Below are positions 2,387 to 22,000 of a DNA stretch of 64,000 nucleotides, in pieces (within the stretch, counting starts at the first letter, position 1; each line of letters opens with the position of its first letter). The notes under the pieces are model-generated. The model did not search any database, had not been told where the DNA came from, and saw nothing but the letters and a program-made list of their open reading frames with translations. The position numbers and the translations under genes were made by a program. The stretch comes from Macrostomum lignano (lineage: Eukaryota): the NCBI GenBank assembly GCA_002269645.1, contig NIVC01003208.1, positions 1 to 64,000 on the forward strand, in the 5' to 3' direction.

Positions 2387-3775
2387 CGATTTCATGAAAA
2401 TTGAAAAATCTCTAACGGAGCAGAGTGCGTTGTGTCAAGAGTGAAATACCATCGTAGGAATTAACCGCTGCATCCAAGTGTTTACTTTTTCTAAGGTATC
2501 GGCCGAACACTAACGGTAGCTACTGAACACTACTTATACCATCCAAGGTGGATATACCTCGGCACCTGCTTATGCTATAAACGCTCGACTTTGCAGTGTG
2601 CCAGGCTATTAAAATACGCTCGAAGCAATACTCATTGCTTTAATTTAATCTGTCACTGCTTTAACCTGCACAGATATTGGCGGGGGCTGCCGTGCGATTC
2701 ACACGAGCTGTGGGCACCCTGGCGCAATGCCTTTGATCACATCTGTGTCACATCCAGAGCTGACACAGAGTGTACAGCGGCAGCACATGCGTGTACGAAC
2801 TTGAAATCCAGAAGGTGAACAAAGGTTAAATAATAGATTCAGGTTTTCCCGCCCGCCCGCTACTAGTGCAAAAGTACAAAGACTAGGCGGACAAAGACGC
2901 TGAAGCTTAGTGAGGGACAAGGCCGAGCGGCTGAATCAAGACTGTTTCTCTAATTCTGATTAAGACGAGGCGAGAACTCGTGTATTTATTGTAAGGCTAT
3001 CTAGTATAAAACTCTAGTGAGCTGTCAGGTGAGGTCGGCTATAACTAATATGCTGAGCTATAAATCAAATCGGTGACTTGGCGTTCTGTTCTGACCAAAC
3101 ACACAAACGGGAGTAAAAAAGGGGATCTGATTTAAAACTTCAAAAATACTGAAGGGAGGAGGCGGGTGCTGCGAAATTGAAAAAAGCGGAAAAGCTGTGA
3201 GCTCGGAGCGATAGAAGGGCGAAGCAAACAATAGCAGGGACACGCAGGCTGCTGTGGAGAGCAATACTAAAAACAAAAAAGGTAAAAAAACAATTATTAG
3301 ACATTGAAGGACCAATAGAATTAAATGAGATATTCGGGCTCGCCAGACAGGGGACTAAAAATGAACAGCAAAAAACTAACTGAGACACGACGCATTGTTC
3401 ATTTTTGCTTAAAAAGCGGAGTGATAAAACCAAGTGAATAAAATGAGACAGAGGCAATCCGAAAATCGAGTTTATCACGCGAATTTGAGATTATTCACAT
3501 AGGCTACTAACAGCAATGTCTATGCTAGCTTGCGAGGGTCATGAAAGTTCTGCAGTGCATCTCTGGCGCAAGTTGATGAGAAAAAATTGAGAATCGATTT
3601 GTCTGTCAAAACCAGTCTGATGCAGCGGTCTCCATAGCGACAGGGTGTGAAAAAAAACTGGGTAGCAAAAACTAATAAGAAAACTAATAAATAAGAAGTC
3701 GCATGCTGGCCCGGCACGAGGGCAACCCGCGGATCCGCAACTCTGAACTGCCTGAATAATCCTGATGTTGAACTT

Positions 3776-4472
3776 CCAATCCCAATCCTGAAACTGCCGA
3801 CCCCAATCCTGAATCTGCCGACCCCAATCCTGAATCTGCCGATACCAACCCTGAATCTGCCGATACCAACCCTGAATCTGCCGATACCAACCCTGAATCT
3901 GCCGATACCAATCCTGAAACTGCCGATACCAACCCTGAATCTGCCGACCCCAATCCTGAAACTGCCGATACCAATCTTGAAACTGCCGATACCAATCCTA
4001 AAACAGCAAATGCCAATCCTGAATCTACCGATACAAATTCTGAAACTGCCGAAACCAATACTGAACCTGCAAATGCCAATTCTGAAACTGCCGATACCAA
4101 TCTTGAAACTGCCCATACCAATACTGAACCTGCAAATGTCAATCCTGAAACTGCCGATACCAATCTTGAAACTGCCCATACCAATCCTAAAACTGCAAAT
4201 GTCAATCCTGAAACTACCGATACCAATCTTGAAACTGCCCATACCAATCCTAAAACTGCAAATGTCAATCCTGAAACTACCGATACCAATCTTGAAACTG
4301 CCCATACCAATCCTAAAACTGCAAATGTCAATCCTGAAACTACCGATACCAATCTTGAAACTGCCCATACCAATCCTAAAACTGCAAATGTCAATCCTGA
4401 AACTACCGATACCAATCTTGAAACTACCGATACCAATGCTGAAACTGCAAAAGCCAATTCTGAAACTGCCTA
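3776..4472. repeat. Degenerate 21-bp tandem repeat (ATCCTGAAACTGCCGATACCA consensus), with a 42-bp higher-order unit in its distal part
   Basis: Period 21 read directly; see finding on synonymous-type variation. Confidence 0.9.
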
Positions 4473-4561: not shown

Positions 4562-7500
4562 TCAAAGCGCGATCTCGTCCTCCTCGGCGAGCCCCTGGGC
4601 GGAGAGGGTCCGCTGCACCGAGTCGCTCTCATAAACAGAGTCGTGCTTGGCCAGGATGCGCAGCAGGGGGCGCAGCTTCAGCCACCACTGCGTGTCCGGC
4701 CGCTGCATGCGCAGCTTGAAGTCCGTGTCGCTCAGCAGCTCCGTCACCGGCCTGACGCTCGTGCCGCGCTTCGTGATGCCCACGATGGCCGCGCTGGCCG
4801 TGGCCGATTCGTCCACGGTGGCCGGGCGGCCGGCCGCGCCGCCGGACAGCACCCGAGAGAACCAGTCGGCGGCCTTCACGCCGAACTTCGTGGCCAAGTT
4901 GCGGTCGTAAGGCGATGGCGTGCCGCCTGTGGGAGCAGATCGGGGAGGTGGCTTTCGGGACCCACCTCAGGAAGCAGTCAGACCTACATTAGGAAGCAAT
5001 CAGGACCCACTTTAGGATTCAGTCAGACCTACATTAGGAAGCAGTCAGGACCCTCTTCAGGATTCAGTCAGACCTACATTAGGAAGCAGTCAGGACCCAC
5101 TTTAGGATTCAGTCAGACCTACATTAGGAAGCAGTCAGTACCCACTTCAGGAATCAGTCAGTACCCACTTCAGGAATCAGTCAGTACCCACTTCAGGAAT
5201 CAGTCAGTACCCACTTCAGGAATCAGTCAGTACCCACTTCAGGAAGCAGTCAGTACCCACTTCAGGAAACAGTCAGTACCCACTTCGGGATTTAGTCAGT
5301 ACCCACTTCAGGAAGCAGTCAGTACCCACTTCAGGAAACAGTCAGTACCCACTTCAGGAAGCAGTCAGTACCCACTTCAGGAAGCAGTCAGTACCCACTT
5401 CAGGAATCAGTCAGTACCCACTTTAGGAATCAGTCAGTACCCACTTCAGGAAACAGTCAGTACCCACTTCAGGAAACAGTCAGTACCCACTTCGGGAATC
5501 AGCCAGTACCCACTTCAGGAAGCAGTCAGTACCCACTTCGGGAAACAGTCAGTACCCACTTCAGGAATCAGTCAGTACCCACTTCAGGAAACAGTCAGTA
5601 CCCACTTCAGGAAGCAGTCAGTACCCACTTCAGGAATCAGTCAGTACCCACTTTAGGAAACAGTCAGTACCCACTTCAGGAAACAGTCAGTACCCACTTC
5701 GGGAAACAGTCAGTACCCACTTCGGGAAACAGTCAGTACCCACTTTAGGAATCAGTCAGTACCCACTTCAGGAAACAGTCAGTACCCACTTCAGGAAACA
5801 GTCAGTACCCACTTTGGGAAACAGTCAGTACCCACTTCAGGAATCAGTCAGTACCCACTTCAGGAAACAGTCAGTACCCACTTCAGGAAACAGTCAGTAC
5901 CCACTTCGGGAAACAGTCAGTACCCACTTCGGGAAACAGTCAGTACCCACTTCGGGATTTAGTCAGTACCCACTTCAGGAAACAGTCAGGACCCACTTCA
6001 GGAAGCAGTCAGTACCCACTTCAGGAATCAGTCAGTACCCACTTCGGGATTTAGTCAGTACCCACTTCAGGAAGCAGTCAGTACCCACTTCAGGAATCAG
6101 TCAGTACCCACTTTAGGAATCAGTCAGTACCCACTTCAGGAAACAGTCAGTACCCACTTCGGGAAACAGTCAGTACCCACTTCAGGAATCAGTCAGTACC
6201 CACTTCGGGAAACAGTCAGTACCCACTTCGGGAAACAGTCAGTACCCACTTCAGGAATCAGTCAGTACCCACTTCGGGAAACAGTCAGTACCCACTTCAG
6301 GAAACAGTCAGTACCCACTTCGGGAAACAGTCAGTACCCACTTCAGGAAACAGTCAGTACCCACTTCAGGAAACAGTCAGTACCCACTTCGGGAAACAGT
6401 CAGTACCCACTTCGGGATTTAGTCAGTACCCACTTCAGGAAACAGTCAGTACCCACTTCGGGAAACAGTCAGTACCCACTTCAGGAAACAGTCAGTACCC
6501 ACTTCAGGAAACAGTCAGTACCCACTTCGGGAAACAGTCAGTACCCACTTCGGGATTTAGTCAGTACCCACTTCAGGAAACAGTCAGGACCCACTGCAGG
6601 AAAAATCCAGGACCCACTGCAGGAAGCAGTCAGGGCACACTTCAGCCGGTACTTCAACAAACAAAGCTGACCAACATCCGAAAGCAAGCGGGCTGACCAA
6701 AATTTACAGCCAAGAAACAGCGCCCGACACCCACCCTGCTGCATGTGGCCCAGCACGTTGGAACGGCAGTCGAAGACGCCCTTGCCCTCCTCCTTGAAGA
6801 CGCGGTACACAAAGTCAGTCGAGTAGTTCTCGTTGGCGAGCTCGTTGCGCAGGATGAGGCCCCGCTGCAGGCCGCAGTCGTCGTGCATTTTCTGCTTGAG
6901 GTGGCGCACATCGTCCAGCAGCACGGCCAGGTCGAATTTGTCCTCCTTGATGTAGGCAGCGTCCGCACCGCCGGCCAGGCCAGCCAGGGTGGCCAGGTAG
7001 CCGCAGTAGCCGCCCATGGTCTCCACCACGAACACGCGGCGCTGGGTGCCAACGGCGCTCTGCTTGATCTTGTCGATGATCTGCGTGATCTCATTGAGCG
7101 CGGTGTCAGCCCCGATGGAGAAGTCCGTGCCGGGCACGTTGTTGGAGATTGTGCAGGGCACCACCAGCATGGGCACGGCCAGGGCTGGCTGGCTTGGCCG
7201 GGCCTGGAACAGCTGCACCAGCGAGCTGAAGGCCTCGAAGCCGCCGATCAGCAGCATGCCTCTCAGGTTCTCCACCTTGGACAGGGCCTCGGCCACCTGG
7301 GCGGCATTGAATGGCGGCCAGGAAATTACAGGTAGAATCTAAATTGGAAAACTTATGGAAAGGTGGAAGGCGTGCCGACAGTGGGAGAGCTTAGCAGATA
7401 GTGGGAGAGCTTAGCAGATAGTGGGAGAGCTTAGCAGATAGTGGGAAAGCTTAGCAGATAGTGGGAGAGCTTAGCAGATAGTGGGAGAGCTTAGCAGATA

Positions 7501-10500
7501 GTGGGAGAGCTTAGCAGATAGTGGGAGAGCTTAGCAGATAGTGGGAGAGCTTAGCAGATAGTGGGAGAGCTTAGCAGATAGTGGGAGAGCTTAGCAGATA
7601 GTGGGAGAGCTTAGCAGATAGTGGGAGAGCTTAGCAGATAGTGGGAGAGCTTAGCAGATAGTGGGAGAGCTTAGCAGATAGTGGGAGAGCTTAGCAGATA
7701 GTGGGAGAGCTTAGCAGATAGTGGGAGAGCTTAGCAGATAGTGGGAGAGCTTAGCAGATAGTGGGAAAGCTTAGCAGATAGTGGGAGAGCTTAGCAGATA
7801 GTGGGAGAGCTTAGCAGATAGTGGGAGAGCTTAGCAGATAGTGGGAGAGCTTAGCAGATAGTGGGAGAGCTTAGCAGACAGTAGAAGAGCTTAGCAAATT
7901 GTGACAGCTTAGGTAGCAAATCTGCAGCTTCCTGGCAACTCACGGCGGCGATGCCGACCTCCTCCGCGGTGATCCGCTTGGTGCCGAGGCAGCTGCCGCC
8001 GGAGGACGTCAGGCCGGACACGGACTCCCAGCTCAGCGGGCGGAAGCTGGCCTTGACGAGGCCGTCGAAACCGCCGTTGACGCCCAACACGCGGAAGCCG
8101 TTGCTGATGCCGGTGCGGACGAAGGCGCGCACGCAGGCGTTGGCGCCGCAGGCGGGGCGCCGACCATCACGATGAGCAGCGTCGGGCAGCTGTCGCTGCA
8201 GGCGTTGGCGGGCGAGTGCAGCTTCTTCAGGGTCCGGTAGGTGGCCAGGTTGTTGATGAAGGACTTGCCGCGCAGCTCCACGGACTGGGCGTAGTTCTTG
8301 GCCTGGATGGCCTCGTTCACCGCCTTCGTGCGGGCCACGCACTCCACCAGCGGCAGCCGCACAGCCTGCGGCGGAGGGAGGGAAGCGATGGCTTCGGTAA
8401 ACGGTTGTAAGATGCTGGCACCCAGAGATGCTGGTCTGCAGAGATGCTGGCACCCAGAGATGCAGAGATTCACATAGTCTGGCACTCATGGAGATGCTGG
8501 CGCCCAGAGATGCTGGTATTCACAGTCTGGCACTCATAGAGATGCTGGCGCCCAGAGATGCTGGTATTCACAGTCTGGCACTCATAGAGATGCTGGCGCC
8601 CAGAGATGCTGGCACGAGTATTCACAGAGTCTGGCACTCACAGAGATGCTGGCGTCCAGAGATGCTGGCACCCAGAGATGCTGGTATTCACAGAGTCTGG
8701 CACTCATAGAGATCCTGGCACCCAGAGATGCTGGTATTCACAGAGTCTGGCACTCATAGAGAAGCGGGCACTCAGAGTCTAACACTTAGAGAGGCTGGCA
8801 CTCAGAGTCTAACACTCACAGAGGCTGGCACTCACAGGCACAGTCACTCTCAGATGCATGCCATTCAAGAAGTCACAGATTCACCCCTACAACCAGAGGC
8901 GGAAGGAGCCCGGGCGCCTGTGCAGTACCTGATTGGCATCGAGGCTGACAACGATGGATGGCAGCTCCGGGTTCTGGCGGGCGTCCAGCAGGGCCAGCAC
9001 GGCCTCGGCAGCCATACGGCAGCCCAGCAGGCGGTCAAAGGCAGATGGGGCACCGCCACGCTGTACGTGGCCGAGGACGGTGACCCTGGTGTCGTACTTC
9101 AGCTTCTGGCTGATCGTGTCCCGGATGAGGTTGGCGCTGATGGCGTTGCCCTCAGTGTCGATGGCGCCCTCGGCCGCGATGATGATGTTCAACCGCTTGC
9201 CGCGTTGCCGGGCCTGCGGTGGCGAGGGCGGAGCGACTGTCAGTGTGTTGAAGGACAGGGGTTGCATGGTACTGAAGGGCAGGGGTTGCAGGGTACTGAA
9301 GGGCTGGGGTTGCAGGGTACTGAAGGGCTGGGGTTGCAGGGTACTGAAAGGCTGGGGTTGCAGGGTACTGAAGGGCTGGGGTTGCAGGGTACTGAAGGGC
9401 TGGGGTTGCAGGGTACTGAAGGGCAGGGGTCACAGGTTACTGGAGGGCACCGAGGCTCACCTTGATCAGATGGTTGCACATCACATCGGGCCAGTCGGTG
9501 CCCGGAGGCTCCTCAGGGATGAACAGAAAGTCGGCCTCGCAGCACAGGGCGGACACCAGCGCCAGGTAGCCGCAGTGACGGCCCATCACCTCCATGACGA
9601 AGGCACGCTGATGGCTCTGCGCGGTGGTGGCGATGGCGTCGCAGGCCTCGATGATGCGGTGCAGCGCCGAGTCCGTCCCGATGGTCATGTCGGTGCCGCA
9701 GAAGTCGTTGTCGATGGACCCGACCATCCCCGCGATGTGCAGGCTGGCATAGTCGCGCCGCTGCTTCTCTGTGACCGCGCCTTCCTTGAGCAGCTCGTCC
9801 ACCAGGGACGGCCACTCCTGGCGGAACAGGTCCGCTCCTGCGGGGGTGGGGGGTTGTTGGTTCGAAACCGTGCTGTGTTGGCCTTAGCCCGCTGCCTTTT
9901 TACCAGCCTTTCCTATCTCAATCTTCCCTCCCAGCATCTCAATCCGCCCTTCCAGCATCTCAATCCTTACTCCCAGCATCTCAATCCTTACTCCCAGCAT
10001 CTCAATCCTTACTCCCAGCATCTCAATCCTTACTCCCAGCATCTCAATCCTTACTCCCAGCATCTCAATCCTTACTCCCAGCATCTCAATCCGCCTTCCC
10101 TTTCTCAGCATCTCAATCCTCCCCCAGCCCACCGGTCAGTGAGCCGTCACCGCCGATGACCACCAGGTTGGTGATGCCGCGGCGGATGAGGTTCCTAGCG
10201 GCCTGTAGGCGGCCCTCGCGAGTCCGGAAGCGGGCGGAGCGGGCGGAGCCGATGACGGTGCCGCCCAGCTGGATGATGCCGGACACGAGGCCCCAATTGG
10301 CCTCCTTGATCATCTCCTGGCCGTCTTCGCCGTCGCCGATCATCCCTTCGTAGCCCTCGTAGATAAGATAGACCCGGAAGCCGCAGTAGAGGCCCATGCG
10401 GACCACGGCCCTGATGGCGGAGTTCATGCCCTGCGAGTCGCCGCCGGAGGTGAAGACGGCCAAAGCCGGCCGCTCGTGCAGCGGCAGCATGCGGAGCGCG

Positions 10501-10783
10501 TCCGTGACTGCGGAAGTCACGGCGGGGATTTGAGGATGAGCGGCAGGTGGGAACTGGCGCAAATGAAGTGTGTGCCGGACTAGCGGCAGTCTCCGATATT
10601 AAGATGAGTTCGCTAGTTGATGCAGAACACTCGAGACATGAACAACACGAACTGCACGCACGCTACGTGTCTGCGTAAACTGTGAAGCGCCTTGGCGATT
10701 AGAAAAAGTTCAAGCTGGACATTCATGATGTAAAAACTGTTACTTTCTGTACTCGTGCTCTGCACCAGGACTGAACAGCCCGC

Positions 10784-10816
<33 letters not shown>

Positions 10817-12895
10817 GCTGAAAGTGCGGGCAATTGCGCAAGGACCGCTAGCAGTAGGGGAGGAACTTTAAAAATGCGTCAAGTTATGCAGATTTTATTT
10901 TATCTGGAATTCTTTGCTTTTCTGGCACTAAACTGACACTTCTGCTGTTTGCCTTTTCTGGCACTAAACTGACACTTCTGCTGTTTGCCTTTTCTGGCAC
11001 TAAACTGACACCTCTGCTGTTTGCCTTTTCTGGCACTAAACTGACACTTCTGCTGTTTGCCTTTTCTGGCACTAAACTGACACCTCTGCTGTTTGCCTTT
11101 TCTGGCACTAAACTGACACCTCTGCTGTTATTGCCTTTTCTGGCACTAAACTGACACCTCTGCTGTTATTGCCTTTTCTGGCACTAAACTGACACCTCTG
11201 CTGTTTGCCTTTTCTGGCACTAAACTGACACCTCTGCTGTTTGCCTTTTCTGGCACTAAACTGACACTTCTGCTGTTTGCCTTTTCTGGCACTAAACTGA
11301 CACCTCTGCTGTTTGCCTTTTCTGGCACTAAACTGACACTTCTGCTGTTTGCCTTTTCTGGCACTAAACTGACACTTCTGCTGTTTGCCTTTTCTGGCAC
11401 TAAACTGACACCTCTGCTGTTTGCCTTTTCTGGCACTAAACTGACACCTCTGCTGTTTGCCTTTTCTGGCACTAAACTGACACCTCTGCTGTTTGCCTTT
11501 TCTGGCACTAAACTGACACCTCTGCTGTTTGCCTTTTCTGGCACTAAACTGACACCTCTACTGTTATTGCCTTTTCTGGCACTAAACTGACACCTCTGCT
11601 GTTTGCCTTTTCTGGCACTAAACTGACACCTCTGCTGTTTGCCTTTTCTGGCACTAAACTGACACCTCTGCTGTTTGCCTTTTCTGGCACTAAACTGACA
11701 CCTCTACTGTTATTGCCTTTTCTGGCACTAAACTGACACCTCTGCTGTTTGCCTTTTCTGGCACTAAACTGACACCTCTGGTGTTTGCCTTTTCTGGCAC
11801 TAAACTGACACCTCTGCTGTTATTGCCTTTTCTGGCACTAAACTGACACTTCTGCTGTTTGCCTTTTCTGGCACTAAACTGACACCTCTGCTGTTTGCCT
11901 TTTCTGGCACTAAACCATATAGTTTATAGTACAAAGCGATAATCCAAAAAGTGAGAAATTTGTCAATAGAAGTGCTCAAATAGGTTTCTGTTGCATTTAA
12001 AAGCGACTTTCATCATGTTGGCGCACTACACCCTGTTACTGCCAGCGGTAATGGCGATCACACTTCACACCAGTGTGCAAAGTGCACAGTGCCACAGTAC
12101 CCAGACTATCAGCAGTGCAGTATTGAAACTTGCCCTTCATGTAGATGGGAAGCCCCAGCCTGCCATCTGGGAGACAGTTAGCATCAGAGTAGGGAATGGG
12201 ATTATTATGGTGTAAATGCATGCTTCGGCTGCTGTCTACAACTGATTCATAACTGAGCGATTGGCTAAGAAGGTAAATATAAAACTGTCAATCTATTATT
12301 TTTAAATACTTTAAAAAATGAAGCACAGCACACTGCAGAAGATAAACATTGATTAGTGCAGAAAATAGGTTTATATCAGCTATTAAAAAGGCTTTACTAA
12401 TATTAAAAAAACAAAAACTCATTAGAAATAATAGGTTATCAAGGCATTTAAATAAGGAGGGCTATACCATGAGCAGCATGCATCTGGTAACTCAATTATT
12501 AATTCGTGATAATCAATTTGAAACATTGAGATGTGACAAATACCTATGGCTGAAATATGTGTAGAGCAGTTTTCATGGTCAGTAATTTACATTTCAATTC
12601 ATAGCAATGAACTTCAATTCAATGCATTTCATACATTAGTAAGTCAAATGCAAGGCCAAAAGATCTGACAAAAACCAATCTAAACATGCTTTTAAAGAGC
12701 AAAATTTGCAGCAATACAACTTTGCAGGAAAACACAGGATCAGAATCCCAAGCAATTTCAACACTCTGTCATTACTACTTCAAGTAGTTATATTTTATTT
12801 ATTTCGATTAGAAGATAATACAATATGGCAATGTATACATACAATCAACAAAAAGCAAACTTACACGACTTCCTTGTACTAGCCTGGTATGCCAT
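4562..12895 (-). CDS. PFK: ATP-dependent 6-phosphofructokinase (eukaryotic two-domain type), ~827 aa if the 1-bp frameshift is corrected
   Basis: Well-supported exons 10133-10507, 9461-9837, 8929-9213, 7944-8365, 6735-7296, 4562-4926; tentative 5' exons 12865-12895 and 12101-12166. Motifs [96 protein letters not shown]. Exon 7944-8365 is 422 nt, one base short of frame. Confidence 0.95.
4965..6630. repeat. 23-bp minisatellite in the last PFK intron
   Basis: Unit CAGTCAGTACCCACTTCAGGAA(T/G/A); a longer related variant at 4965-5140. Confidence 0.95.
7381..7895. repeat. 20-bp minisatellite in a PFK intron, ~26 copies
   Basis: Unit GTGGGAGAGCTTAGCAGATA, near perfect. Confidence 0.95.
8410..8850. 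repeat. Degenerate ~48-bp minisatellite in a PFK intron
   Basis: GAGATGCTGGCGCCCAGAGATGCTGGTATTCACAGTCTGGCACTCATA-like units. Confidence 0.8.
9250..9430. repeat. 24-bp minisatellite in a PFK intron
   Basis: Unit GGGCTGGGGTTGCAGGGTACTGAA. Confidence 0.9.
9930..10120. repeat. 21-bp minisatellite in a PFK intron
   Basis: Unit CAGCATCTCAATCCTTACTCC. Confidence 0.9.
10785..10816. repeat. (CAGA)n microsatellite
   Basis: CAGACAGACAGA run. Confidence 0.9.
10915..11915. repeat. 36-bp minisatellite (39-bp variants), in the probable second PFK coding intron
   Basis: Unit GCCTTTTCTGGCACTAAACTGACACCTCTGCTGTTT. Confidence 0.95.
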
Positions 12896-15599
12896 GGTGC
12901 AAGCTGAAACAGTAGGATTATATAATTTTGCTGAGACATTGTGTAAAAATATGAGACATTGCAAAAGTTTCTAGATTGCATTTACTGCAATAACAGGAGA
13001 TTTAAATGAGTTGAAATTTTAGCCACAACTCTCCTGCATATCTACTCTATTGAAATGGTAAAACTGCAAAAACAATTTGAAATGCTTAGCTCATTAGCTC
13101 ATAACTCCTAAGCTTATACTCATGAAACTCATATAAGGGCTATTAAAAAAGTTCTGCATATTGGTTAATAACTTCAGAAGTTCATGCACTAATGTGCTAA
13201 TATTTAGCATGCACAATCTATGATATCTGCTTATTCAGTTTCAATTTTCTGCCTTAATATATAATAATTATTATTATTAGGCTGTTTAGTACAAAAGCTA
13301 AAGGAGTCCCTACACATACCCTCAATTATCCCAGCTAATGCTAGTACCCATTTACAGCTAGGTGAACTGAAGCAATGCAGAGTTAAGTGTTGTTCAAGGA
13401 CATAAATTGTTCCCAATGGGTTTGGAATCAAATCCTTAACTTTTTAGTTGTAAGTCTAATGGCATAGCTGGCATAGCACCATTTCATACCTTTGTTTTGA
13501 GTCACTATAGTAAGCCAAGTTCACTGTATCTCACTCATATGACTCATATGACTCAACTGTAGGTCATTTGGCTAATACTTTGAATATGCGGACATACCTA
13601 TCTCTTAAGTGGTTATGTATCAAATTTTATTTCATTGCTAACTTATTTTACAATGAAGATACACAATGGTATTGACTTTGACAACCTGCTACTTTGGCTT
13701 AATAACAATATAAGGGGAAAATTGAGACCCTAAGTAAGCAATTATCATAGTCTATGTGTCAAATACTAGCTCATAAAAAACATATATATGCTTTTAAAGT
13801 TATTAAACAAACTAGAAATTTTCTAACAGCCTTTATAAACTATTTTTTTAAGTTAAAAACAGGCAATTTTTTAATACTTAAAATATAACTCCAATCTGTT
13901 CTACAAGTATCAGGCTTATAAAACTGTATATAAGCATACTGAATACACAAGTTAATTTAGTCTATATATATTATTAGACCCTATAAGTCCTAGGATTTAT
14001 ACTTAAATAGGAACTTCAATAAGGGTCCCATGGCTTGCCAATATTCAAAAGGCAAATTTGAATAAAAATATACTTTTTTTCAAATGAAAAACTTTGCAGT
14101 ATAATGATATGGATTAGAAAGCAAATATTAATTAGAAATAAAAGAAAAAGTAAAACCTAAAAAACAAAAAACAAAAATAGGACTGGCTTTCAATGCCAAT
14201 GGGATTATAATAAACTATATTATCTTTTTCGTAGAAAAGAATAAGGCCCTTGGCCTTATTAAAAACAAAAAATGTTTCAGACACTAGTATAAAAGTTTAT
14301 TATAAAATACAAAGCCTTTATGTTAAAAATTTCAAACTATTTTTTCTATTCTTAACTAATCTGTTTATTTGATATACTTAAAATTTTAATAAACTTCTTA
14401 CTATTTTGAATTTTTCAACATTGTTGGTAATGGTGTTTGTTAGCATTGTTGTCCTAATTAGGAAACAACATTTGTATGCTTAAATGTTTATTATAAGAAG
14501 ACACAAATTATAGACAAATGGCAATAGCAATAAATAATTAAATTATTTTTGATATTTTCTTCTTATTATGCATTTAAGTTTAAGGCTAATTTCTGTAAGC
14601 ATTGTTACAAAGCTTTTGGGTTTTATAGTTGTATTGGATTCATTTTTAATAATAGTTAAAAAAAAGGATTAAAAAAGTTTAAAAAATATAATTAGTTTAA
14701 GTTAATTTTTAGAATATTTTTTACAATATCTAAGACTAAGTCAAGATGTTAATTGCAAGATAGGCCTAATATATTATCTAAATAAGCTAAGAATAAGACT
14801 AGGATTAGGTAGGATTATAGGCCTATATAGACATATTGCAGGCATAAACTTATTAATATTAGGTAAGATTATAAAAGTTTAAGGCGGCCTAGATATTTAA
14901 ATCAAGACATCTTATTTTATTTGTACAAAAACCTATCCTCCTATTAGTATGATAGACAAACTAGGCCTAGATAGTTATAGTTATAGTTATGTCAAGTTCT
15001 ATATATTACATATTATATTTTGCTTATTTGACAAAGCTATTTGAATAATGAATAGGTTAACTTAAAGGAGCTTGCTGCAACCAAATGCAATTGTCAACAA
15101 ACATGTCGGCATAGCCATGCCAATAGGACATAGGTATGTCGTTTTGACTTCGTTTTAGGAAATTGTGTCTGTGTAGTTATTTAGTTTTGTGTGTGATATG
15201 AAATATTACATCTACGATCTATGAAATATTACATAGACCTACATAATTTGTCATTTGGTTTTCAGCTTACTAATTTTACACTCGATGAAAAATGATAAAT
15301 AGCTAAATAGCCTAATAGTAGTAAATTGCTCAGGCAAACAGCCTGTTTGGCCAGTAAGAATAAGAACTACTTTTCGTCCTAAGATTTATTGTGAACAGGC
15401 TATTTATCGTAATAAGAATATATACTAAAATTATAGTAATTGTATTTATTGTAAAAAGATTTATTGTAAGAAATATTAAAATGAAATTTTTCAAATTTTC
15501 AATAATGCAGTTTTCAAAACGTTATAAAACTCTGTATACTCCTAGTTTTCTCATGCAGAGCGCCGAGAAAAAAATATAAACTCTTTCTTTATTAACTGA

Positions 15600-16250
15600 G
15601 GTCATTTACCTGCCTAAACTTGAGGTTGCTTTTTAGTTTGTTATTTGAAGACAAAAATTCACAGCTGATTATTCAATGATTTCAAATTTTGCTCGGAAGT
15701 GTTTTTAATGAATTTGTTCAAATTGAACTGACTTATGATAATCGATTAGTGTCTGGGTAAAGTCCTGCATGTCAATTTTCAGCGACAGAGAGCAAGAAGA
15801 AGTACTCGAAATCGAATATCAATTTATTACAATGATTGTAAAGCAAACTGTAAAAAATCCTTTCAATCTGTAGCCGTAATTTTTTTTAAGTCGGTTTATC
15901 TCCTGAATGATATTTCTTCTGTAAAAAATCATGGCGTTTGGTGCTTTAAAAGCAGAGATTTTTGTTATTTCCGAATATCGATCTTGAATATCGCTCGGGG
16001 AATCCCTGCATTATTATTTCTCCTGCAAGTTGAGTTGACATTGTTATCATTAACTCAAATAAAAATAAAAGCTTTATTTTATTTAACGTTTTAGTTTTTA
16101 GCTTTTCTCACCTCAATCCTTCTAATTTCTAAAGTTGTGCTATTTAATTTAGATAAGTCAAACTTTAGAATTGAACATTGAAGGCCTTTATTATTCCGTC
16201 CGTTATTTAATGCTAGCTAAATTAAATAATGCAACACCAACTGGTCACTA
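15600..16250. promoter_or_regulatory. Candidate bidirectional promoter for PFK (-) and CK1a (+): CpG-retaining patch
   Basis: About 15 CG in 15661-16210 versus 2 CG in 12870-14884 at visually similar AT content. Lies between divergent genes. Minus-strand donor CAG|GTAAAT at 15610/15609 could end a PFK 5'UTR exon. Inference only. Confidence 0.4.
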
Positions 16251-17629
16251 AATAAACAATTTGAGTTTTTGAAGCTGAGAAAAGAATTTGATTTTATCGT
16301 AAAAGAAGCTAAGGTTTTTAGTAAGTAAAAACCAAAAATATGATTAAGCCTAGACCTATTTGAATTCAATTGACATATATCAATATCAATATATGGGCAT
16401 CGTTTTCCAGAAAACCTAGCAAAATCAACAGCTACAAAAGTTGAGTATCTAGGCTTAGGACCTTTTCCCAGACATAAAGAACAATTTAGGATATGATTTT
16501 GCATCTTAGTGCCAAGGTACTTAGGCCTATGTACTTAGGATGCTATATAGTATCCTGACTTTCCAAATTGTATTCTGAAATTAGACCTAAGCTGTGATTT
16601 CATAAATATAATTGCAATTCAGCTCTAAGAGTCCAAGTTTTCTTATAGTTTCACTACATATTGTCTTATCTATATGGCACACTAACATTCAATTCAAAAT
16701 AGCTGGCCTATATTTAATAAGTGCAGCCCATTTTGGCAAAGGAATTTTTTGCAAAAGATGCTTTAGGCCTAGTAAAAGTGATTTTTTAGTTTAAATCAAT
16801 ATATATTTTGGTGAAAGAAAGTGACAGTTTAGTGAAAAGATTGGCTATATAATACATATATAATTACAAATATAGGCCCCCCCTATATTTGGTGAATCGG
16901 TGATTGAAGCCTTAAAAAATTATTCATTGCTGCAAATTAAATTATTTGCAGTTAGAAAATTTAAAAACTCATGCTATGGTAGTTATGGTATTTACATGCA
17001 ATCTATTGATATGCAATCAATTGATTAGGGATAATAATGGTGTGTAACTTTTGGTTTTAAAGTTGTTCCACTAGTTCTAGTTCCTAAAATCGTACTTTGA
17101 AATCCTGTTGTAATGGAAGGGCATCCAATAAAACAACTATATTATTAGCCATTATGTTAAGTATTTTTTGCCATTATTGACTTTTGTCAAAAATTCTTTC
17201 ACCAAAATGGATTGAAACCTATTTAAAAAGTTTAATAATTAGGAAGTCTAATAACCTATTAAGTTTGCTATCTTATTATTAGGCAAGTAGGTATTCATGT
17301 CATTTTTATTAATATAAAATTGTAGAAAAGATTTCTACTTTTTTTAGTTCTTAGTTACTAAATATAATTTTTAATGAATTTAAACTAGGCCTAAATAAGC
17401 CTATTTAAAAATAAAAAATAATACAAAAATAGCCTACTTCATTAGTTAGGTCCACTATAGCATAGTTTAAATAAATTAGCCATAAAATAGCAGTCTAAAG
17501 GTAATAGCAAAGAAGCAAATACTCTAAAGTAACAAGAGTTAATATAATGTGCATCATTGCCTCCCACTATTTTTGGATATTTGGAGCCAAAGTCAGAGTA
17601 ATTTGAGGTATTAATATGAGTTTATACAT

Positions 17630-18192
17630 CATACATGCGCAACTGTTGGCCAACCTGGCCAATCCAGCCAATGTAAATTGTGGTGGACCAGGGGTAAGTT
17701 GCAAAAATGCCCACCCCAAAGAATACAGACGTAGTACTAATTAGATGATGAGGCATTTAGCCCTTATAAAACAGTTATAGTTACTCCTGCAGTTTACCCA
17801 AAATTGTGTTTTTTTGCTTTAGGGTTTCTTTCACAGGTAAATTGTATTTTTGGTCAAAAAGTAAGTTGCATGGCCAGTGTAAATCAGGGGGGTTGCACAT
17901 GTATCTTATACATGTGTAACTGGCAACCCCCCATTTATATTGGCCATGTGCTATGTGACTTACTTTTTGACCAAAAATGTAAATAACCTATAAAAAAACA
18001 CTAAAGCAAAATTAATATAATTTTGGGTAAATGGCACAAGTAACTTGACTATCTTATTAAGGCTAAATGCCTCATCAGTTTTTTAGTAATATGTCTATAT
18101 TTTTAGGTGGGCATTTTTGCAACATTTTCCTTGTGCATCATAGTTTATAATTAGCTAGATCTGCTAGGTTAGCCAGCAGTTGTGCATGTATG
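17630..18192. mobile_element. Foldback/MITE-like palindromic element, ~560 bp, possibly TA-flanked (Tc1/mariner-type)
   Basis: 17630-17904 aligns by eye with the reverse complement of 17908-18192 (e.g. GTTGCAAAAATGCCCACC, TGATGAGGCATTTAGCC, TTTACCCAAAATT, ATTTTTGGTCAAAAAGTAAGT); 3-nt loop CTT at 17905-17907; TA at 17632-33 and 18189-90. Confidence 0.85.
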
Positions 18193-19014
18193 TGTGGGCT
18201 ATTTTTAGCTATTCCTACTATTAATGGTATTTGTATATTTATATTGATTTTTTATTTTACTTTTTAATAATATATGCTAATATGCATTGGCAAACTATAC
18301 TATAAATAAAAACTTTTTCTAGTCAAGAAGCCTAAACCTACTATTTTATCTAGAAATTATTTGGCAATTGGATTGAAAAAGTATATTAATATAAATATTA
18401 ATATAACTGTTCATTCTATGGGACACCCTACTGAACTCTGCTTTATAAATTCCTAGGCATGCTCAATGGGATTCTAGAGACTGATAGCCAAGTGCTATTA
18501 GGTTTCATTGTACTATACCTGCCTCCCTCCCTCCCAATTCCCCTATGCTGCACTTAGTGCTGGCAATGGCAGCCTTTATACACTTAAATTACCAATGGCA
18601 TGCAAAACACTTGGCCTATGTTATTGAGTATATATTGCCTTACATACCTGAATATGTGTGTCTCATAAAAGTTTAGTAAATTAAATAAAATCATAGTATG
18701 GTAAATTGTATTGAATCAAAATGCATTGTATGGCATTTGTATGCTTTGAGGGTGAGAATAGGAAAAATCCTGTTTACTTTAGCTCAGTGGAATAAAAATA
18801 ATTGTTCCTACTGTTTGAAATAGTGTAATATATGCTCATTGGCTAGCATAATTTTTGTTGTAATTAATCTGTCCAAAGCACTATATGTGATAATGGGGGT
18901 ATATAAATCTTATCATAATTACTTATCCCACTGTTGCTGCTGTGAGCCCCAGGCCCCTCCCCGCCCAGCTGCTAGGAGACCCCTGAGAACAGCTCGAAAC
19001 TGGCCAATCCGCAG

Positions 19015-22000
19015 ATGGACCCGCAGGTGGTTAGGAAGACGGACTTCGTTGTCGGGGGCAAGTACAAGCTGACCCGCAAGATTGGCAGCGGCTCCTTTGG
19101 CGAGATCTACCTTGGCGTGAGCATCATCAATGGCGAGGAGGTGGCCGTGAAGCTGGAACCTGTCACTGCGCGTCATCCCCAGCTGCTGTATGAGAGCAAG
19201 GTGTACAAAATTCTGCAGGACGGCATTGGCATTCCCAGCGTCAGGTGCGGGCTGCTTCTGTCTGCATTCGCTGTGTCCTCTGTCTGCATTCTGTATCCTG
19301 TCTGCATTCTGTGTTCTCTGCCTGCGTTCTCTGTGTCCTGTCTGCATTCTGTATCCTGTCTGCATTCTGTGTTCTCTGCCTGCGTTCTCTGTGTCCTCTG
19401 TCTGCATTCTGTATCCTGTCTGCATTCTGTGTTCTCTGCCTGCGTTCTCTGTGTCCTGTCTGCATTCTGTGTATCCTCTGTCTGCATTCTCTGTGTTCTC
19501 TGCCTGCATTCTCTGTGTTCTCTGTCTGCATTCTCTGTCCTCTGTCTGCATTCTGTGTTCTCTGTCTGCATTCTCTGTGTTCTCTGCCTGCATTCTCTGT
19601 GTTCTCTGTCTGCATTCTCTGTGTTCTCTGCCTGCATTCTCTGTGTTCTCTGTCTGCATTCTGTGTATCCTCTGTCTGCATTCTCTGTGTTCTCTGTCTG
19701 CATTCTCTGTGTTCTCTGTCTGCATTCTCTGTGTCCTCTGTCTGCATTCTGTGTTCTCTGTCTGCATTCTCTGTGTCCTGTCTGCATTCTGTGTATCCTC
19801 TGTCTGCATTCTCTGTGTTCTCTGCCTGCATTCTCTGTGTTCTCTGTCTGCATTCTCTGTCCTCTGTCTGCATTCTGTGTTCTCTGTCTGCATTCTCTGT
19901 GTTCTCTGTCTGCATTCTGTGTATCCTCTGTCTGCATTCTCTGTGTTCTCTGTCTGCATTCTGTGTATCCTCTGTCTGCATTCTCTGTGTTCTCTGCCTG
20001 CATTCTCTGTGTTCTCTGTCTGCATTCTCTGTGTTCTCTGCCTGCATTCTCTGTGTTCTCTGTCTGCATTCTCTGTGTTCTCTGCCTGCATTCTCTGTGT
20101 TCTCTGTCTGCATTCTCTGTGTCCTCTGTCTGCATTCTGTGTTCTCTGTCTGCATTCTCTGTGTTCTCTGCCTGCATTCTCTGTGTTCTCTGTCTGCATT
20201 CTCTGTCCTCTGTCTGCATTCTGTGTTCTCTGTCTGCATTCTCTGTGTTCTCTGTCTGCATTCTCTGTGTCCTCTGTCTGCATTCTGTGTCCTCTGTCTG
20301 CATTCTGTGTCCTCTGTCTGCATTCTCTGTGTCCTCTGTCTGACGTGCCTGAGCCGTGTCCCATCAGTGCCTCACACAGCGCTGCCCCTGACCCGCAGGT
20401 GGTACGGCCAGGACGGCGTGAAGAACCAGTACAACTGCCTGGTGATGGACCTGCTGGGCCCCAGCCTGGAGGACCTGTTCACCTTCTGCTCCCGCCGCTT
20501 CACTATGAAGACCGTGCTGATGCTGGCCGACCAGATGCTGTGCCGCATCGAGTTCGTGCACAACAAGAACTTCATTCACAGGTGAGGCGCATCGGTCTCT
20601 GCGCATTAGGGTTCATTTGCTGAGCGCCTATTTTTATCTTACGCTGCATTTCCTGACAGACAGCTCGGCAATCGGGCTGGGCTTTCCTGCCTGTTATCTG
20701 CGCCTTCCGCCCCGCACAATATGCGCTGCGAACTCCAGGCCTTCTAATTGAGTCCCCCTGCTCTGCCTCTCAGCTCTGCCCCCTGCATGCCTGCCCGCGT
20801 CCAAGTAATTTTTAATTACCGATTTGGGACGCCGGTCCCAGCTGACCCCCCCCCATCTGCCCTGGAATGACGCGCCGAACCTTAATTCGCATCTGTTGCG
20901 CAAGCTGTCTGTGATTGCGCAGTGATGGGCTTTTGCGCCGTCTGCTCTCGGTGTACTTTTATACTCGTAGTTTGCTATGGTGAAAGCTCACCTATGACTG
21001 GCACTGCCCCATTATAACCCCATGGCCTTCCTCATAACCCATCATGACCCATTGCCATCCCTCATAACCCATTTCCATCCCATTATGACCTATCGCCACC
21101 CCTCATGACCCATTTCCATCCAATTATGACCCATCGCCACCCCTCATGACCATCGCCATCCCTCATGACTCATCGCCATCCATAATGACTCATCGCCATC
21201 CTTAATGACTCATCGCCATCCATAATGACTCATCGCCATCCATAATGACCCATCGCCATCCCGCATGACCCATCGCCATCCCGCATGACCCATCGCCATC
21301 CCTCATGGCCCATCGCCATCCATAATGACCCATCGCCATCCCTCATGACTCATCGCCATCCCTCATGACCCATCGCCATCCCGCATGACCCATCGCCATC
21401 CCTCATGACCCATCGCCATCCATGACTCATCGCCATCCATAATGACCCATCGCCATCCCTCATGACCCATCGCCATCCCTCATGACCCATCGCCATCCCC
21501 AGGGACATCAAGCCCGACAACTTCCTGATGGGCATCGGGCGGCACTGCAACAAGCTGTTCCTGGTGGACTTCGGCCTGGCCAAGAAGTACCGGGACTCGC
21601 GCACCAAAACGCACATCCCCTACAGGGACGACAAGAACCTCACCGGCACCGCCCGCTACGCCTCCGTGAACGCCCACGCCGGCATCGAGCAGTCGCGTCG
21701 AGACGATCTCGAGAGTCTGGGTTACGTTTTCATGTACTTCCTCAGGTCTTCTCTGCCCTGGCAGGGGCTGAAGGTAGGTGTGCTCAGGAGCGACCCTCGC
21801 TAACCAGAGGTTGTGCTCATGACCCGCTAAATATTCAGGCTCACCCAAATCCCATTGGGTTTGGCGCCACCCAGACACCTAGATTCGATGGGGTTTGGCG
21901 CCACCCAGACACCTAGATCCCATTGGGTTTGGCGCCACCCAGACACCTAGATCCCATTGAGTTTGGCGCCACCTAGACACCCAGATCCCATTGGGTTTGG

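What the first reader, a model, noticed from the sequence alone, without database searches (positions are those of the whole stretch)
17630..18192. Palindromic MITE arms record CpA-to-TpA hypermutation (RIP-like signature in an animal)
Seen: aligning the left arm with the reverse-complemented right arm, at least 12 mismatches are CA or TG versus TA, nearly all with TA in the right arm (GCCAAC/GCTAAC, CCTGG/CCTAG, TCCAG/TCTAG, GCCAAT/GCTAAT, ATACAG/ATATAG, ATTGTGT/ATTATAT, TCACAGG/TTATAGG, GTGTAAA/ATATAAA). There are also classic CG/CA and TG/CA pairs, while CC and CT sites are mostly kept. Known: CpG-only methylation ends after one step (CG to TG or CA); reaching TA needs C-to-T at CpA, as in Neurospora RIP or non-CpG methylation by vertebrate DNMT3A. 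Inference: a CpG plus CpA methylation/deamination system acting on defined domains of this genome. It does not look repeat-induced, since tandem arrays elsewhere keep CG and CA.
Basis: partly seen in the sequence, partly recalled or inferred. Interest (0 to 1): 0.85.

Follow-up and report, generated by a model that had tools for sequence, protein, structure and literature searches.

The report
Young transposon nested in old copy
The "palindrome" is a younger copy of a small flatworm transposon that landed inside the end of an older, inverted copy. The TA-rich arm is the older copy, worn down by ordinary CpG decay and GC-to-AT drift, with at most a mild extra bias at CpA.

Summary
It is not one palindromic MITE. 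It is two copies of a 277-bp, hAT-like MITE family (14-bp TIRs, 8-bp TSDs, thousands of copies) in Macrostomum lignano (assembly Mlig_3_7).

The left arm (17630-17905, 93% identical to the family consensus) has a perfect TSD, TTATACAT. It inserted into the terminus of an older inverted copy (17907-18192, 81% identical). Two paralogous loci keep the old copy with an empty site. The asymmetry between the arms is therefore an age difference.

Transitions in the old copy against its ancestor:
- CpG: 15/24
- CpA: 8/35
- CpC: 5/32
- CpT: 2/27
- A/T: 2/150

CpA is not significantly above CpC+CpT (p=0.24). Standard RIP indices are not met, and the changes are not strand-coordinated. The AT-rich "domain" is ordinary intergenic background.

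Across the family, CpA transitions run about 1.7-fold above CpC/CpT (tree-aware, p=0.003). They loosely track CpG decay, but a sister subfamily shows no excess. This is a weak lead toward CpA methylation, not hypermutation. DNMT1 and DNMT3 are present; no match to the one APOBEC family searched (Pfam APOBEC_N).

The parts
17630..17905 (+). TIRs are CATACATGCGCAAC ... GTTGCACATGTATC.
   Evidence: 92.8% identical to the family consensus and about 91% to other genomic copies. It is absent from the paralogous loci L032 and L033, which join 17626 directly to 17906.
17622..17629 (.). Left target-site duplication of the younger copy, TTATACAT. Bases 17623-17629 duplicate the first 7 bases of the old copy's terminus.
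   Evidence: Read directly from the sequence. The automated TSD survey found 0 mismatches.
17906..17913 (.). Right target-site duplication of the younger copy, TTATACAT.
   Evidence: The paralogs carry this 8-mer once, as TTATATAT, with no footprint.
17907..18192 (-). It has no CpG left, 32.5% GC and a 7-bp internal insertion next to its terminus.
   Evidence: 81% identical to the young consensus and 76-79% to other copies. It is present at 93-96% identity in paralogs L032/L033, which lack 18101-18172.
17615..17622 (.). Decayed left TSD of the older copy, TATGAGTT.
   Evidence: It matches TGTGGGCT (18193-18200) at 5 of 8 positions. The 3 mismatches are all transitions, with the A/T state on this side. 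The same flanks occur in the paralogs.
18193..18200 (.). Decayed right TSD of the older copy, TGTGGGCT.
10563..19014 (.). AT-rich intergenic spacer (about 30% GC) between the divergently transcribed phosphofructokinase and casein kinase 1 alpha genes. Both MITE copies lie in it.
   Evidence: PFK exons lie on the minus strand up to 10562. CK1 starts at 19015 on the plus strand.

Best explanation
This is a nested insertion followed by neutral decay. The genome is Macrostomum lignano.

Sequence of events:
1. An old copy of a non-autonomous, hAT-like cut-and-paste element (277 bp, 14-bp TIRs, 8-bp TSD) sat in the PFK-CK1 intergenic spacer.
2. A younger copy of the same family later inserted in inverted orientation. 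Its 8-bp target, TTATACAT, consists of one flank base plus the first seven bases of the old copy's terminus. That produced a pseudo-palindrome.
3. The two arms differ because one has been decaying much longer.

The decay itself has two ordinary components. The first is fast C-to-T change at CpG, inferred to come from deamination of 5-methylcytosine laid down by DNMT1/DNMT3. The second is a strong general GC-to-AT mutation bias, which pulls inserted 47%-GC elements down toward the roughly 30-35% GC of the surrounding DNA.

TA dinucleotides accumulate in the old arm for two reasons. CpA/TpG is the commonest C-containing step in the element, and decayed CpGs keep feeding that class.

Shown: the two-copy anatomy, the TSDs, the empty site, the rates by context, and the presence of DNMT domains. 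Inferred: that methylation causes the CpG decay, and that a hAT-type transposase mobilises the family.
For: Anatomy:
- Other genomic copies span about 275 bp, not 563. They match the left arm at about 91% and the right arm at about 77%.
- The family consensus is 277 bp and carries 12 CpGs.
- Of 59 copies with both termini, 38 have a perfect 8-bp TSD and 46 have at most one mismatch.
- The left arm has the perfect TSD TTATACAT.
- Paralogs on contigs C571 and C4246 align to 16375-17626 and then directly to 17906-18100. They are empty of the left arm but contain the old copy.

Decay of the old copy against its subfamily ancestor:
- CpG 15/24, CpA 8/35, CpC 5/32, CpT 2/27, A/T-to-G/C 2/150.
- CpA against CpC+CpT: odds ratio 2.2, p=0.24.
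- GC-to-AT against AT-to-GC changes: 39 to 2.
- GC content: 0.466 in the consensus, 0.409 in the young copy, 0.325 in the old copy, 0.303 in the spacer.

Tests against special mechanisms:
- The direction of the TA asymmetry equals the overall asymmetry in derived changes.
- There is no strand bias: 7 C-to-T against 11 G-to-A.
- The RIP substrate index rises rather than falls, from 1.14 to 1.43.
- CG-to-TA double hits across the family: 17 observed against 17.0 expected from each copy's own CpA rate.

Genome background:
- Flanking DNA elsewhere is 35-38% GC with CpG o/e about 0.5.
- The GC-rich parts of the window are minisatellite arrays; the phosphofructokinase and casein kinase 1 exons lie in those GC-rich parts.
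- The DNMT1 targeting domain (RFD) lies next to a methyltransferase domain at 3 loci. The DNMT3 ADD domain lies next to a methyltransferase domain at 3 loci.
- The literature agrees that M. lignano keeps DNMT1 and DNMT3 (PMC9246332, PMC11292947).

Organism: the assembly size, scaffold count and longest scaffold match Mlig_3_7.
Against: - Across the family, CpA transitions exceed CpC/CpT. Pooled rates in the unbiased anchor sample are 0.078 against 0.032 and 0.025. Counted on a tree, the figures are 3.3 against 1.9-2.0 independent changes per site (p=0.003).
- On terminal branches, CpA changes covary with CpG decay after controlling for other changes (t=2.2-3.5). CpC/CpT changes do not.
- The old arm has 4 CG-to-TA double hits against about 1.25 expected.
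- These points leave room for a methylation-linked CpA component on top of plain drift.
- The window differs from its paralogs by 5-9%. That is more than the roughly 2.4% reported between M. lignano subgenomes (PMC10733133), so the relationship of these paralogs is not settled.
Confidence: 0.85

Rival explanations
1. Mild CpA methylation rides along with CpG methylation. In the germline, DNMT3 methylates some CpA sites on transposon copies that are also CpG-methylated. Deamination of those sites adds a CpA-to-TpA component that scales with CpG decay. This is the surviving kernel of the reader's idea.
For: - Family-wide CpA excess of 1.7-fold on the tree (p=0.003) and 2.5- to 3-fold in raw counts.
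- CpA transitions covary with CpG decay on terminal branches, while CpC/CpT transitions do not.
- The CpA:(CpC+CpT) ratio is about 1.1 in copies with strong CpG decay and about 0.6 in copies with little.
- CAC and CAG are somewhat higher than CAA and CAT.
- CpG decay is twice as high in AT-rich, CpG-poor flanks at equal transversion load.
- DNMT3 is present.
Against: - The effect is small. In the unbiased subsets the coupling is not robustly significant (Fisher p=0.05-0.4).
- A sister subfamily measured against its own consensus shows no excess: CpA 0.043, CpC 0.039, CpT 0.060.
- Non-transposon flanks show only about 1.4-fold, and those comparisons are unpolarised (p=0.07).
- Half of the raw CpA changes sit at six sites that behave like subfamily markers.
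- Older copies may inherit TA states from an older master copy, which would mimic the coupling.
- Modest neighbour effects on non-CpG transitions occur in genomes generally (my own knowledge, not tested here).
Confidence: 0.15
2. RIP-like, repeat-induced hypermutation. A duplication-sensing process mutated CpA to TpA in one or both arms in bursts.
For: Thirteen CA/TG-versus-TA pairs between two similar sequences that lie next to each other.
Against: - The young copy, which is just as duplicated, has only 3/40 CpA changes.
- Most changes in the old copy predate the young insertion, because the paralogs that lack the young copy share them.
- The RIP substrate index rises to 1.43, and TpA/ApT is unchanged.
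- CpG, not CpA, is the fastest class.
- The mutation load scales with transversions, as expected for age.
- Tandem arrays in the same window are unaffected.
Confidence: 0.02
3. AID/APOBEC-type cytidine deaminase editing of the element's DNA or of a transposition intermediate.
For: An excess of C-to-T/G-to-A over all other changes: 39 GC-to-AT against 2 AT-to-GC.
Against: - No strand coordination in any copy with at least 10 non-CpG transitions. In the old arm it is 7 C-to-T against 11 G-to-A.
- The dependence is on the 3' neighbour (A), not the 5' T. TCA 0.116, but TCT 0.039 and TCC 0.008.
- No APOBEC_N-domain match in the genome.
Confidence: 0.02
4. A genuine foldback or palindromic dimer formed in one event, whose left arm was later refreshed by gene conversion from a young copy.
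For: The two units abut with no spacer. Inverted neighbouring pairs of this family recur elsewhere, in loci L017, L028 and L063.
Against: - A perfect 8-bp TSD flanks the left unit alone.
- The paralogs show the clean unoccupied target.
- Gene conversion would not create a TSD.
Confidence: 0.02

Closest known systems
hAT-superfamily MITEs and nested transposon insertions
   Same: - Short (277 bp) and non-coding, with terminal inverted repeats.
- 8-bp target-site duplications.
- Thousands of copies, falling into subfamilies of different age.
- One copy inserted into another, which leaves a datable young-in-old pair.
   Different: - The TIR begins CATACATG rather than the common hAT CAG/TAG start.
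- The nTnnnnAn target preference is only weakly visible.
- No autonomous partner or transposase was identified here, so the assignment to hAT rests on TSD length alone. P and Merlin elements also make 8-bp TSDs.
CpG decay of methylated repeats in animals, as in Alu or L1 ageing (comparison from my own knowledge)
   Same: - CpG sites mutate several-fold faster than other sites.
- The products are TpG/CpA.
- The degree of decay tracks copy age.
- The genome-wide CpG o/e is depressed (about 0.5).
   Different: - The CpG-to-other-C rate ratio is only about 4- to 5-fold here.
- It is accompanied by an unusually strong general GC-to-AT bias: non-CpG C-to-T runs about 3- to 5-fold above A/T-to-G/C per site.
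- The organism is a free-living flatworm whose genome-wide methylation pattern a 2022 review calls unknown (PMC9246332).
Repeat-induced point mutation (RIP) of Neurospora and other fungi
   Same: C-to-T/G-to-A transitions that create TpA from CpA, seen in duplicated DNA.
   Different: - Here CpA is not the preferred site; CpG is.
- CpA/TpG is not depleted.
- The younger duplicate is spared.
- The changes accumulate with age rather than in bursts.
- There is no evidence of duplication sensing.
Non-CpG (CpA) methylation by DNMT3-family enzymes in vertebrates
   Same: - A DNMT3 gene is present.
- The residual excess is at CpA, slightly higher at CAC and CAG.
- It tends to accompany CpG decay.
   Different: - No methylation data are available here.
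- The excess is small (1.4- to 2.5-fold) and absent in a sister subfamily.
- A heritable footprint would need germline mCpA, which is not established for any flatworm.

Membership tests
MITE of a cut-and-paste DNA transposon (hAT-like) | Terminal inverted repeats | tested here: met
   The 14-bp TIRs CATACATGCGCAAC / GTTGCGCATGTATG appear in the consensus and in the aligned copies.
MITE of a cut-and-paste DNA transposon (hAT-like) | Target-site duplication of fixed length (8 bp for hAT) | tested here: met
   Of 59 copies, 38 have a perfect 8-bp TSD and 46 have at most one mismatch. The young window copy has TTATACAT on both sides.
MITE of a cut-and-paste DNA transposon (hAT-like) | Small size, no coding capacity, high copy number | tested here: met
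   The consensus is 277 bp. No open reading frame of 110 aa or more overlaps 17630-18192. An internal 13-mer has 626 exact matches against 3 for the control. The first-look searches returned 3000-4306 candidates.
MITE of a cut-and-paste DNA transposon (hAT-like) | hAT-type target consensus nTnnnnAn, and an autonomous partner encoding a hAT transposase with matching TIRs | tested here: inconclusive
   Target position 2 is T in 20 of 43 sites and position 7 is A in 17 of 43. That is only a weak enrichment in AT-rich DNA.
Empty-site proof of insertion | A homologous locus that has the target sequence once and no element | tested here: met
   L032 and L033 read ...GAGTTTATATATGCACAAC..., joining window 17626 to 17906 with a single 8-mer.
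RIP (repeat-induced point mutation) | CpA is the preferred target. CpA/TpG becomes depleted and TpA enriched: (CpA+TpG)/(ApC+GpT) below about 1.03 and a raised TpA/ApT. | tested here: not met
   The old copy scores 1.43 on the substrate index, against 1.14 for the consensus. TpA/ApT is 1.09 against 1.11. CpG is the fastest class.
RIP (repeat-induced point mutation) | Both members of a duplication are hit, in bursts, independent of age | tested here: not met
   The young arm has 3/40 CpA changes and the old arm 9/38. The paralogs that lack the young copy already share the old arm's changes.
RIP (repeat-induced point mutation) | A RID/Masc1-type methyltransferase and a premeiotic dikaryotic stage | not testable with these tools
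   Three kinds of C5-methyltransferase-domain loci exist. Two are DNMT1 and DNMT3 by their neighbouring domains. The third could not be retrieved for classification.
AID/APOBEC editing | Strand-coordinated clusters of C-to-T with a 5' neighbour preference, and a deaminase gene | tested here: not met
   No strand bias in any copy. The 5' T shows no consistent effect. There is no APOBEC_N match. More divergent deaminase families were not searched.
DNMT3-type non-CpG (CpA) methylation footprint | C-to-T at CpA above CpC/CpT, coupled to CpG methylation, in all methylated repeats | tested here: inconclusive
   A 1.7-fold excess on the tree (p=0.003). Coupling to CpG decay with t=2.2-3.5. A sister subfamily shows none. 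The old arm alone gives p=0.24.
DNMT3-type non-CpG (CpA) methylation footprint | Measured mCpA in germline DNA | not testable with these tools
   No methylome data were available. A 2022 review states that genome-wide patterns are unknown in free-living flatworms (PMC9246332).

The most novel reading that the evidence does not exclude
In the germline of Macrostomum lignano, transposon copies that are CpG-methylated also carry appreciable CpA methylation, presumably laid down by DNMT3. This leaves a heritable CpA-to-TpA footprint that scales with CpG decay and varies between genomic regions.
Probability: 0.12. Interest if true: 0.55.

Novelty: new member of a known kind. Interest (0 to 1): 0.2.

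Why it matters
As it stands, this is an ordinary young-in-old transposon nest. It does not show a RIP-like system in an animal.

It has three modest uses:
1. It defines an abundant hAT-like MITE family in a regeneration model flatworm.
2. The family gives sequence-based evidence that transposons and intergenic DNA of M. lignano have been CpG-methylated in the germline. The supporting points are CpG decay about 5-fold faster than other C sites, CpG o/e of about 0.5, stronger decay in AT-rich flanks, and the presence of DNMT1 and DNMT3. A 2022 review calls the methylation pattern of free-living flatworms unknown.
3. It leaves a small CpA-context excess, which a methylome could settle quickly.

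Tried and rejected
- **Singleton-only counting of mutations by context.** Rejected. Fast sites are hit repeatedly across 86 copies, so CpG gave zero singletons. The test is biased against exactly the classes of interest.
- **Fetching 60 more anchor-sampled copies.** The unbiased sample stayed at 40 loci, and DNMT loci could not be read.
- **A second, unrelated repeat family as a replicate.** Only one roughly 160-bp family reached depth 10 in the sequence I held, which is too small. I used the sister subfamily instead.
- **Plant-type CHG methylation.** Rejected. CAG 0.089 against CTG 0.044 is not symmetric, and the PFK and CK1 exons are animal-like.
- **A fungal genome with RIP.** Considered because of the alternating AT-rich and GC-rich composition. 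Rejected once the assembly was identified.
- **Lamprey.** Considered on the basis of the GC-rich exons. Rejected for the same reason.
- **Rfam scan of the window.** Found nothing.
- **Wasik et al. 2015, the primary source for 5mC in M. lignano.** Not held in the library.
- **Literature search for neighbour-dependent CpA-to-TpA rates.** Gave no directly usable benchmark.

Full report
**1. What is at the coordinates**

The stretch 17630-18192 does fold back on itself. Four collinear inverted-repeat blocks of 74-81% complementarity were found, and a global alignment of the left half with the reverse complement of the right half runs end to end. As RNA it would form a 570-nt hairpin of -303.6 kcal/mol, with a z-score of -27 against shuffled sequences. 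The structural observation is real.

**2. It is two elements, not one**

A search of the window's own assembly with the 563-bp stretch found about 40 scored places, out of 4306 first-look candidates. Each spans only about 275 bp. Each matches query positions 1-275 at 89-92% on one strand, and positions 294-563 at only 74-78% on the other strand.

Aligned copies share the sharp termini CATACATGCGCAAC ... GTTGCGCATGTATG. A majority consensus of 93 non-identical copies is 277 bp long, 46.6% GC, and carries 12 CpGs. Of 59 copies with both termini recognisable, 38 have a perfect 8-bp target-site duplication and 46 have at most one mismatch. An internal 13-mer occurs 626 times in the genome, against 3 for the reversed control. 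This is an abundant MITE family with hAT-like 8-bp TSDs.

**3. Nested insertion**

The left unit, 17630-17905, is flanked by TTATACAT at 17622-17629 and again at 17906-17913. The second of these overlaps the terminus of the right unit: TATACATGTGTAAC at 17907-17920, which is the decayed form of CATACATGCGCAAC. The young copy therefore landed in a target made of one flank base plus the first seven bases of an older, oppositely oriented copy.

A search with the right arm found two loci, on contigs C571 and C4246, that match it at 95-96%. These are paralogous copies of the whole neighbourhood. They align to window 16375-17626 and then continue directly at 17906. At the junction they read GAGTTTATATATGCACAAC, which is one copy of the 8-mer, no element and no footprint. 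That is an empty site.

The old copy keeps a recognisable decayed TSD of its own: TATGAGTT at 17615-17622 against TGTGGGCT at 18193-18200. These match at 5 of 8 positions, and all three mismatches are transitions.

**4. Whose genome this is**

- The window's exons encode a phosphofructokinase whose best matches among solved structures are human PFKP, PFKM and PFKL (by my reading of the printed alignment about 75% identical to PFKP), and a casein kinase 1 alpha close to the human enzyme (about 85% by my reading). Pfam confirms the PFK domains. The organism is an animal.
- The assembly has 764,410,778 bases in 5269 records, with a longest record of 2,680,987 bases.
- The Macrostomum lignano Mlig_3_7 paper gives 5270 scaffolds, 764,424,962 bp and a longest scaffold of 2,680,987 (PMC5730564). 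The difference is one record of 14,184 bp; that paper says the separately assembled mitochondrial genome is part of Mlig_3_7, so this may be that record (not checked).
- M. lignano of the DV1 line carries three paralogous genome copies (PMC10733133). That explains why loci recur in threes, at about 99.6% and about 91-98% identity.

**5. The asymmetry between the arms is an age difference**

Against the consensus, the left arm is 92.8% identical and the right arm 81.4%.

I classified every difference between the arms by which arm departs from the consensus. Forty are right-derived and nine are left-derived. The 13:2 asymmetry of the CA/TG-versus-TA pairs is not stronger than that overall asymmetry (Fisher p=0.70).

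The 13 pairs break down as follows:

| Number | What the pair is |
|---|---|
| 4 | Consensus CpG sites at positions 22, 43, 178 and 215: CG to TG/CA in the young arm, CG to TA in the old arm |
| 1 | A T-to-C change in the left arm, on a TA that both arms share |
| 1 | Already TA in the consensus of the older subfamily |
| 7 | Plain CpA/TpG-to-TpA changes in the old copy |

The right arm's own transitions are split evenly: 8 at CpA/TpG, 8 at CpG, 8 at other C/G sites and 1 at A/T.

**6. Rates by context in the old copy**

Older copies share a few diagnostic states. I therefore rebuilt an approximate ancestor for them, keeping CpGs.

| Context | Transitions in the old copy |
|---|---|
| CpG | 15/24 |
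| CpA | 8/35 |
| CpC | 5/32 |
| CpT | 2/27 |
| A/T to G/C | 2/150 |

CpA against CpC+CpT gives an odds ratio of 2.2 with p=0.24. Overall there are 39 GC-to-AT changes against 2 AT-to-GC. GC content falls from 0.466 in the consensus to 0.409 in the young copy and 0.325 in the old copy. The spacer around them is 0.303. The dominant signals are CpG decay and a strong general drift toward AT.

**7. Tests for special mechanisms**

*RIP.* The standard substrate index, (CpA+TpG)/(ApC+GpT), rises from 1.14 in the consensus to 1.43 in the old copy, where RIP would drive it below about 1. TpA/ApT is unchanged at 1.11 against 1.09. The young duplicate is largely spared (3/40 CpA changes). The paralogs that never received the young copy already share the old copy's changes.

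*Deaminase editing.* No copy shows strand coordination. The old arm has 7 C-to-T and 11 G-to-A. The 5' neighbour does not matter in a T-specific way. The genome has no APOBEC_N match.

*Plant-like CHG methylation.* CAG (0.089) and CTG (0.044) are not symmetric.

**8. The 'domain'**

Flanks of MITE copies all over the genome are 35-38% GC, with CpG o/e 0.50-0.53 and TpA o/e 0.92. The window's AT-rich stretches (12-19.2 kb and 51.5-56 kb; 30-32% GC) have the same make-up.

The GC-rich remainder consists of dozens of minisatellite arrays, and the PFK and CK1 exons lie in those GC-rich parts. The MITE pair lies in the 8.4-kb spacer between the divergent PFK and CK1 genes. The AT-rich stretch is the normal background of this genome, not a specially mutated compartment.

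**9. What remains of the CpA idea**

In 21 main-lineage copies sampled without regard to divergence (anchored on the 13-mer), pooled transition frequencies are:

| Context | Frequency |
|---|---|
| CpG | 0.146 |
| CpA | 0.078 |
| CpC | 0.032 |
| CpT | 0.025 |
| A/T | 0.013 |

The site-level test for CpA above CpC/CpT gives p=0.009. Half of the raw CpA changes sit at six sites that look like subfamily markers.

I then counted independent forward changes on a maximum-likelihood tree of 65 copies. The per-site means are 7.2 (CpG), 3.3 (CpA), 1.9 (CpC), 2.0 (CpT) and 0.67 (A/T), with p=0.003 for CpA above CpC/CpT. The excess is real for this family, at about 1.7-fold.

Three further results point toward a link with methylation:
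- On terminal branches, CpA changes covary with CpG changes after controlling for other classes (t=2.2-3.5). CpC/CpT changes do not.
- The CpA:(CpC+CpT) ratio is about 1.1 in copies with much CpG decay and about 0.6 in copies with little. Fisher p ranges from 0.007 to 0.4 depending on the subset, and from 0.05 to 0.4 in the unbiased ones.
- CG-to-TA double hits, 17 observed, match the expectation from each copy's CpA rate (17.0) better than the expectation from its CpC/CpT rate (10.3).

Three results point against anything special:
- A sister subfamily of 11 copies, measured against its own consensus, shows no excess: 0.043 against 0.039 and 0.060.
- Unpolarised differences in non-transposon flanks between paralogs and alleles give only about 1.4-fold (p=0.07).
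- Inheritance of TA states from an older master copy could mimic the coupling.

I rate a genuine methylation-linked CpA component at roughly 0.12-0.15.

**10. Methylation toolkit**

C5-methyltransferase domains occur at three kinds of loci, each present three times.
- One kind lies 6-7 kb from a DNMT1 replication-foci-targeting domain on the same contigs. This is DNMT1.
- A second kind lies 2-4 kb from a DNMT3 ADD domain. This is DNMT3.
- The third could not be retrieved for classification.

Reviews state that M. lignano retains DNMT1 and DNMT3, has low 5mC, and that genome-wide patterns are unknown in free-living flatworms (PMC11292947; PMC9246332).

Three observations are sequence-level evidence for past germline CpG methylation of transposons and intergenic DNA in this animal:
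- CpG decays several-fold faster than other cytosines.
- CpG is depleted in the background DNA.
- At equal transversion load, CpG decay is twice as high for copies in AT-rich, CpG-poor flanks: 0.24 against 0.12.

**11. Verdict**

This is an ordinary young-in-old nest of a newly delineated hAT-like MITE family. The striking TA asymmetry is explained by age, CpG decay and AT drift. The RIP-like reading is rejected. A weak CpA-context bias is left as a lead that a methylome or a genome-wide repeat analysis would settle.

Noticed in passing
window 6538-10562 (minus strand) and 19015 onward (plus strand): A phosphofructokinase gene and a casein kinase 1 alpha gene are transcribed divergently. Between and around their exons lie many minisatellite arrays, in parts of the window that are 50-62% GC against a spacer of about 30% GC. 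Whether each array is intronic was not worked out.
   Followed up: partly
window 34886-43450: A single 17-bp minisatellite (TCACATGAGACCTCAGT) runs for about 510 copies over 8.5 kb. More than 30 further arrays with 10-72-bp units fill most of the non-AT-rich window. This fits the reported 15% simple and tandem repeat content of the assembly (PMC5730564).
   Followed up: no
window 47862-49668 (minus strand): Open reading frames with RING and IBR domains, which suggests an RBR-type E3 ubiquitin ligase gene.
   Followed up: partly
window 57153-58498 (plus strand): Overlapping open reading frames that read like the end of a retrotransposon polymerase (a reverse-transcriptase tail and an RNase H-like part). 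There was no Pfam match at E<=0.001.
   Followed up: partly
window 1461-2386 (plus strand): Glycine-rich open reading frames with runs of GGGGGG separated by short conserved blocks. From memory they resemble the glycine-rich domain of ALK/LTK-type proteins. There was no Pfam match for 1844-2386.
   Followed up: partly
loci L017, L028, L063, L070, L074, L079, L082, L089, L094 and others (each 2.6-3.3 kb): Copies of this MITE family cluster. About a quarter of the 40 anchor-sampled loci hold a second or third copy within about 2.5 kb. By my own rough estimate, from about one copy per 100-200 kb, chance would give a few percent. Closely spaced inverted pairs recur: L017 at about 7-16 bp apart, L028 at 70 bp and L063 at 84 bp. 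This suggests local hopping or a preference for inserting near or into existing copies.
   Followed up: partly
L032 (C571) and L033 (C4246) against window 18101-18172: The two paralogous copies of the locus are 99.6% identical to each other but only 91-95% identical to the window. Their old MITE copy also lacks 72 bp that the window has. The divergence from the window is higher than the roughly 2.4% reported between subgenomes (PMC10733133).
   Followed up: partly
flanks of 58 MITE copies genome-wide (loci L002-L100): At the same transversion load (4.3-4.4 per copy), CpG decay of the inserted MITE is 0.24 in flanks below 37% GC and 0.12 in flanks at or above 37% GC. Rates at CpC, CpT and A/T do not change. 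This points to regionally different germline methylation.
   Followed up: partly
about 170 kb of MITE flanks, and window 12001-19200: GpC is strongly over-represented in background DNA (o/e 1.37-1.67). TpA is barely depleted (o/e 0.92-0.97), which I believe is unusual for a CpG-depleted animal genome. The transition-only equilibrium GC implied by the MITE rates, roughly 0.17-0.21 by my own estimate from the counts, is well below the observed 0.30-0.38.
   Followed up: no
G000 contigs C352, C372 and C2987: Three further ADD-type zinc-finger matches have no C5-methyltransferase match on the same contigs. They may belong to an ATRX-like or other ADD-domain gene.
   Followed up: no
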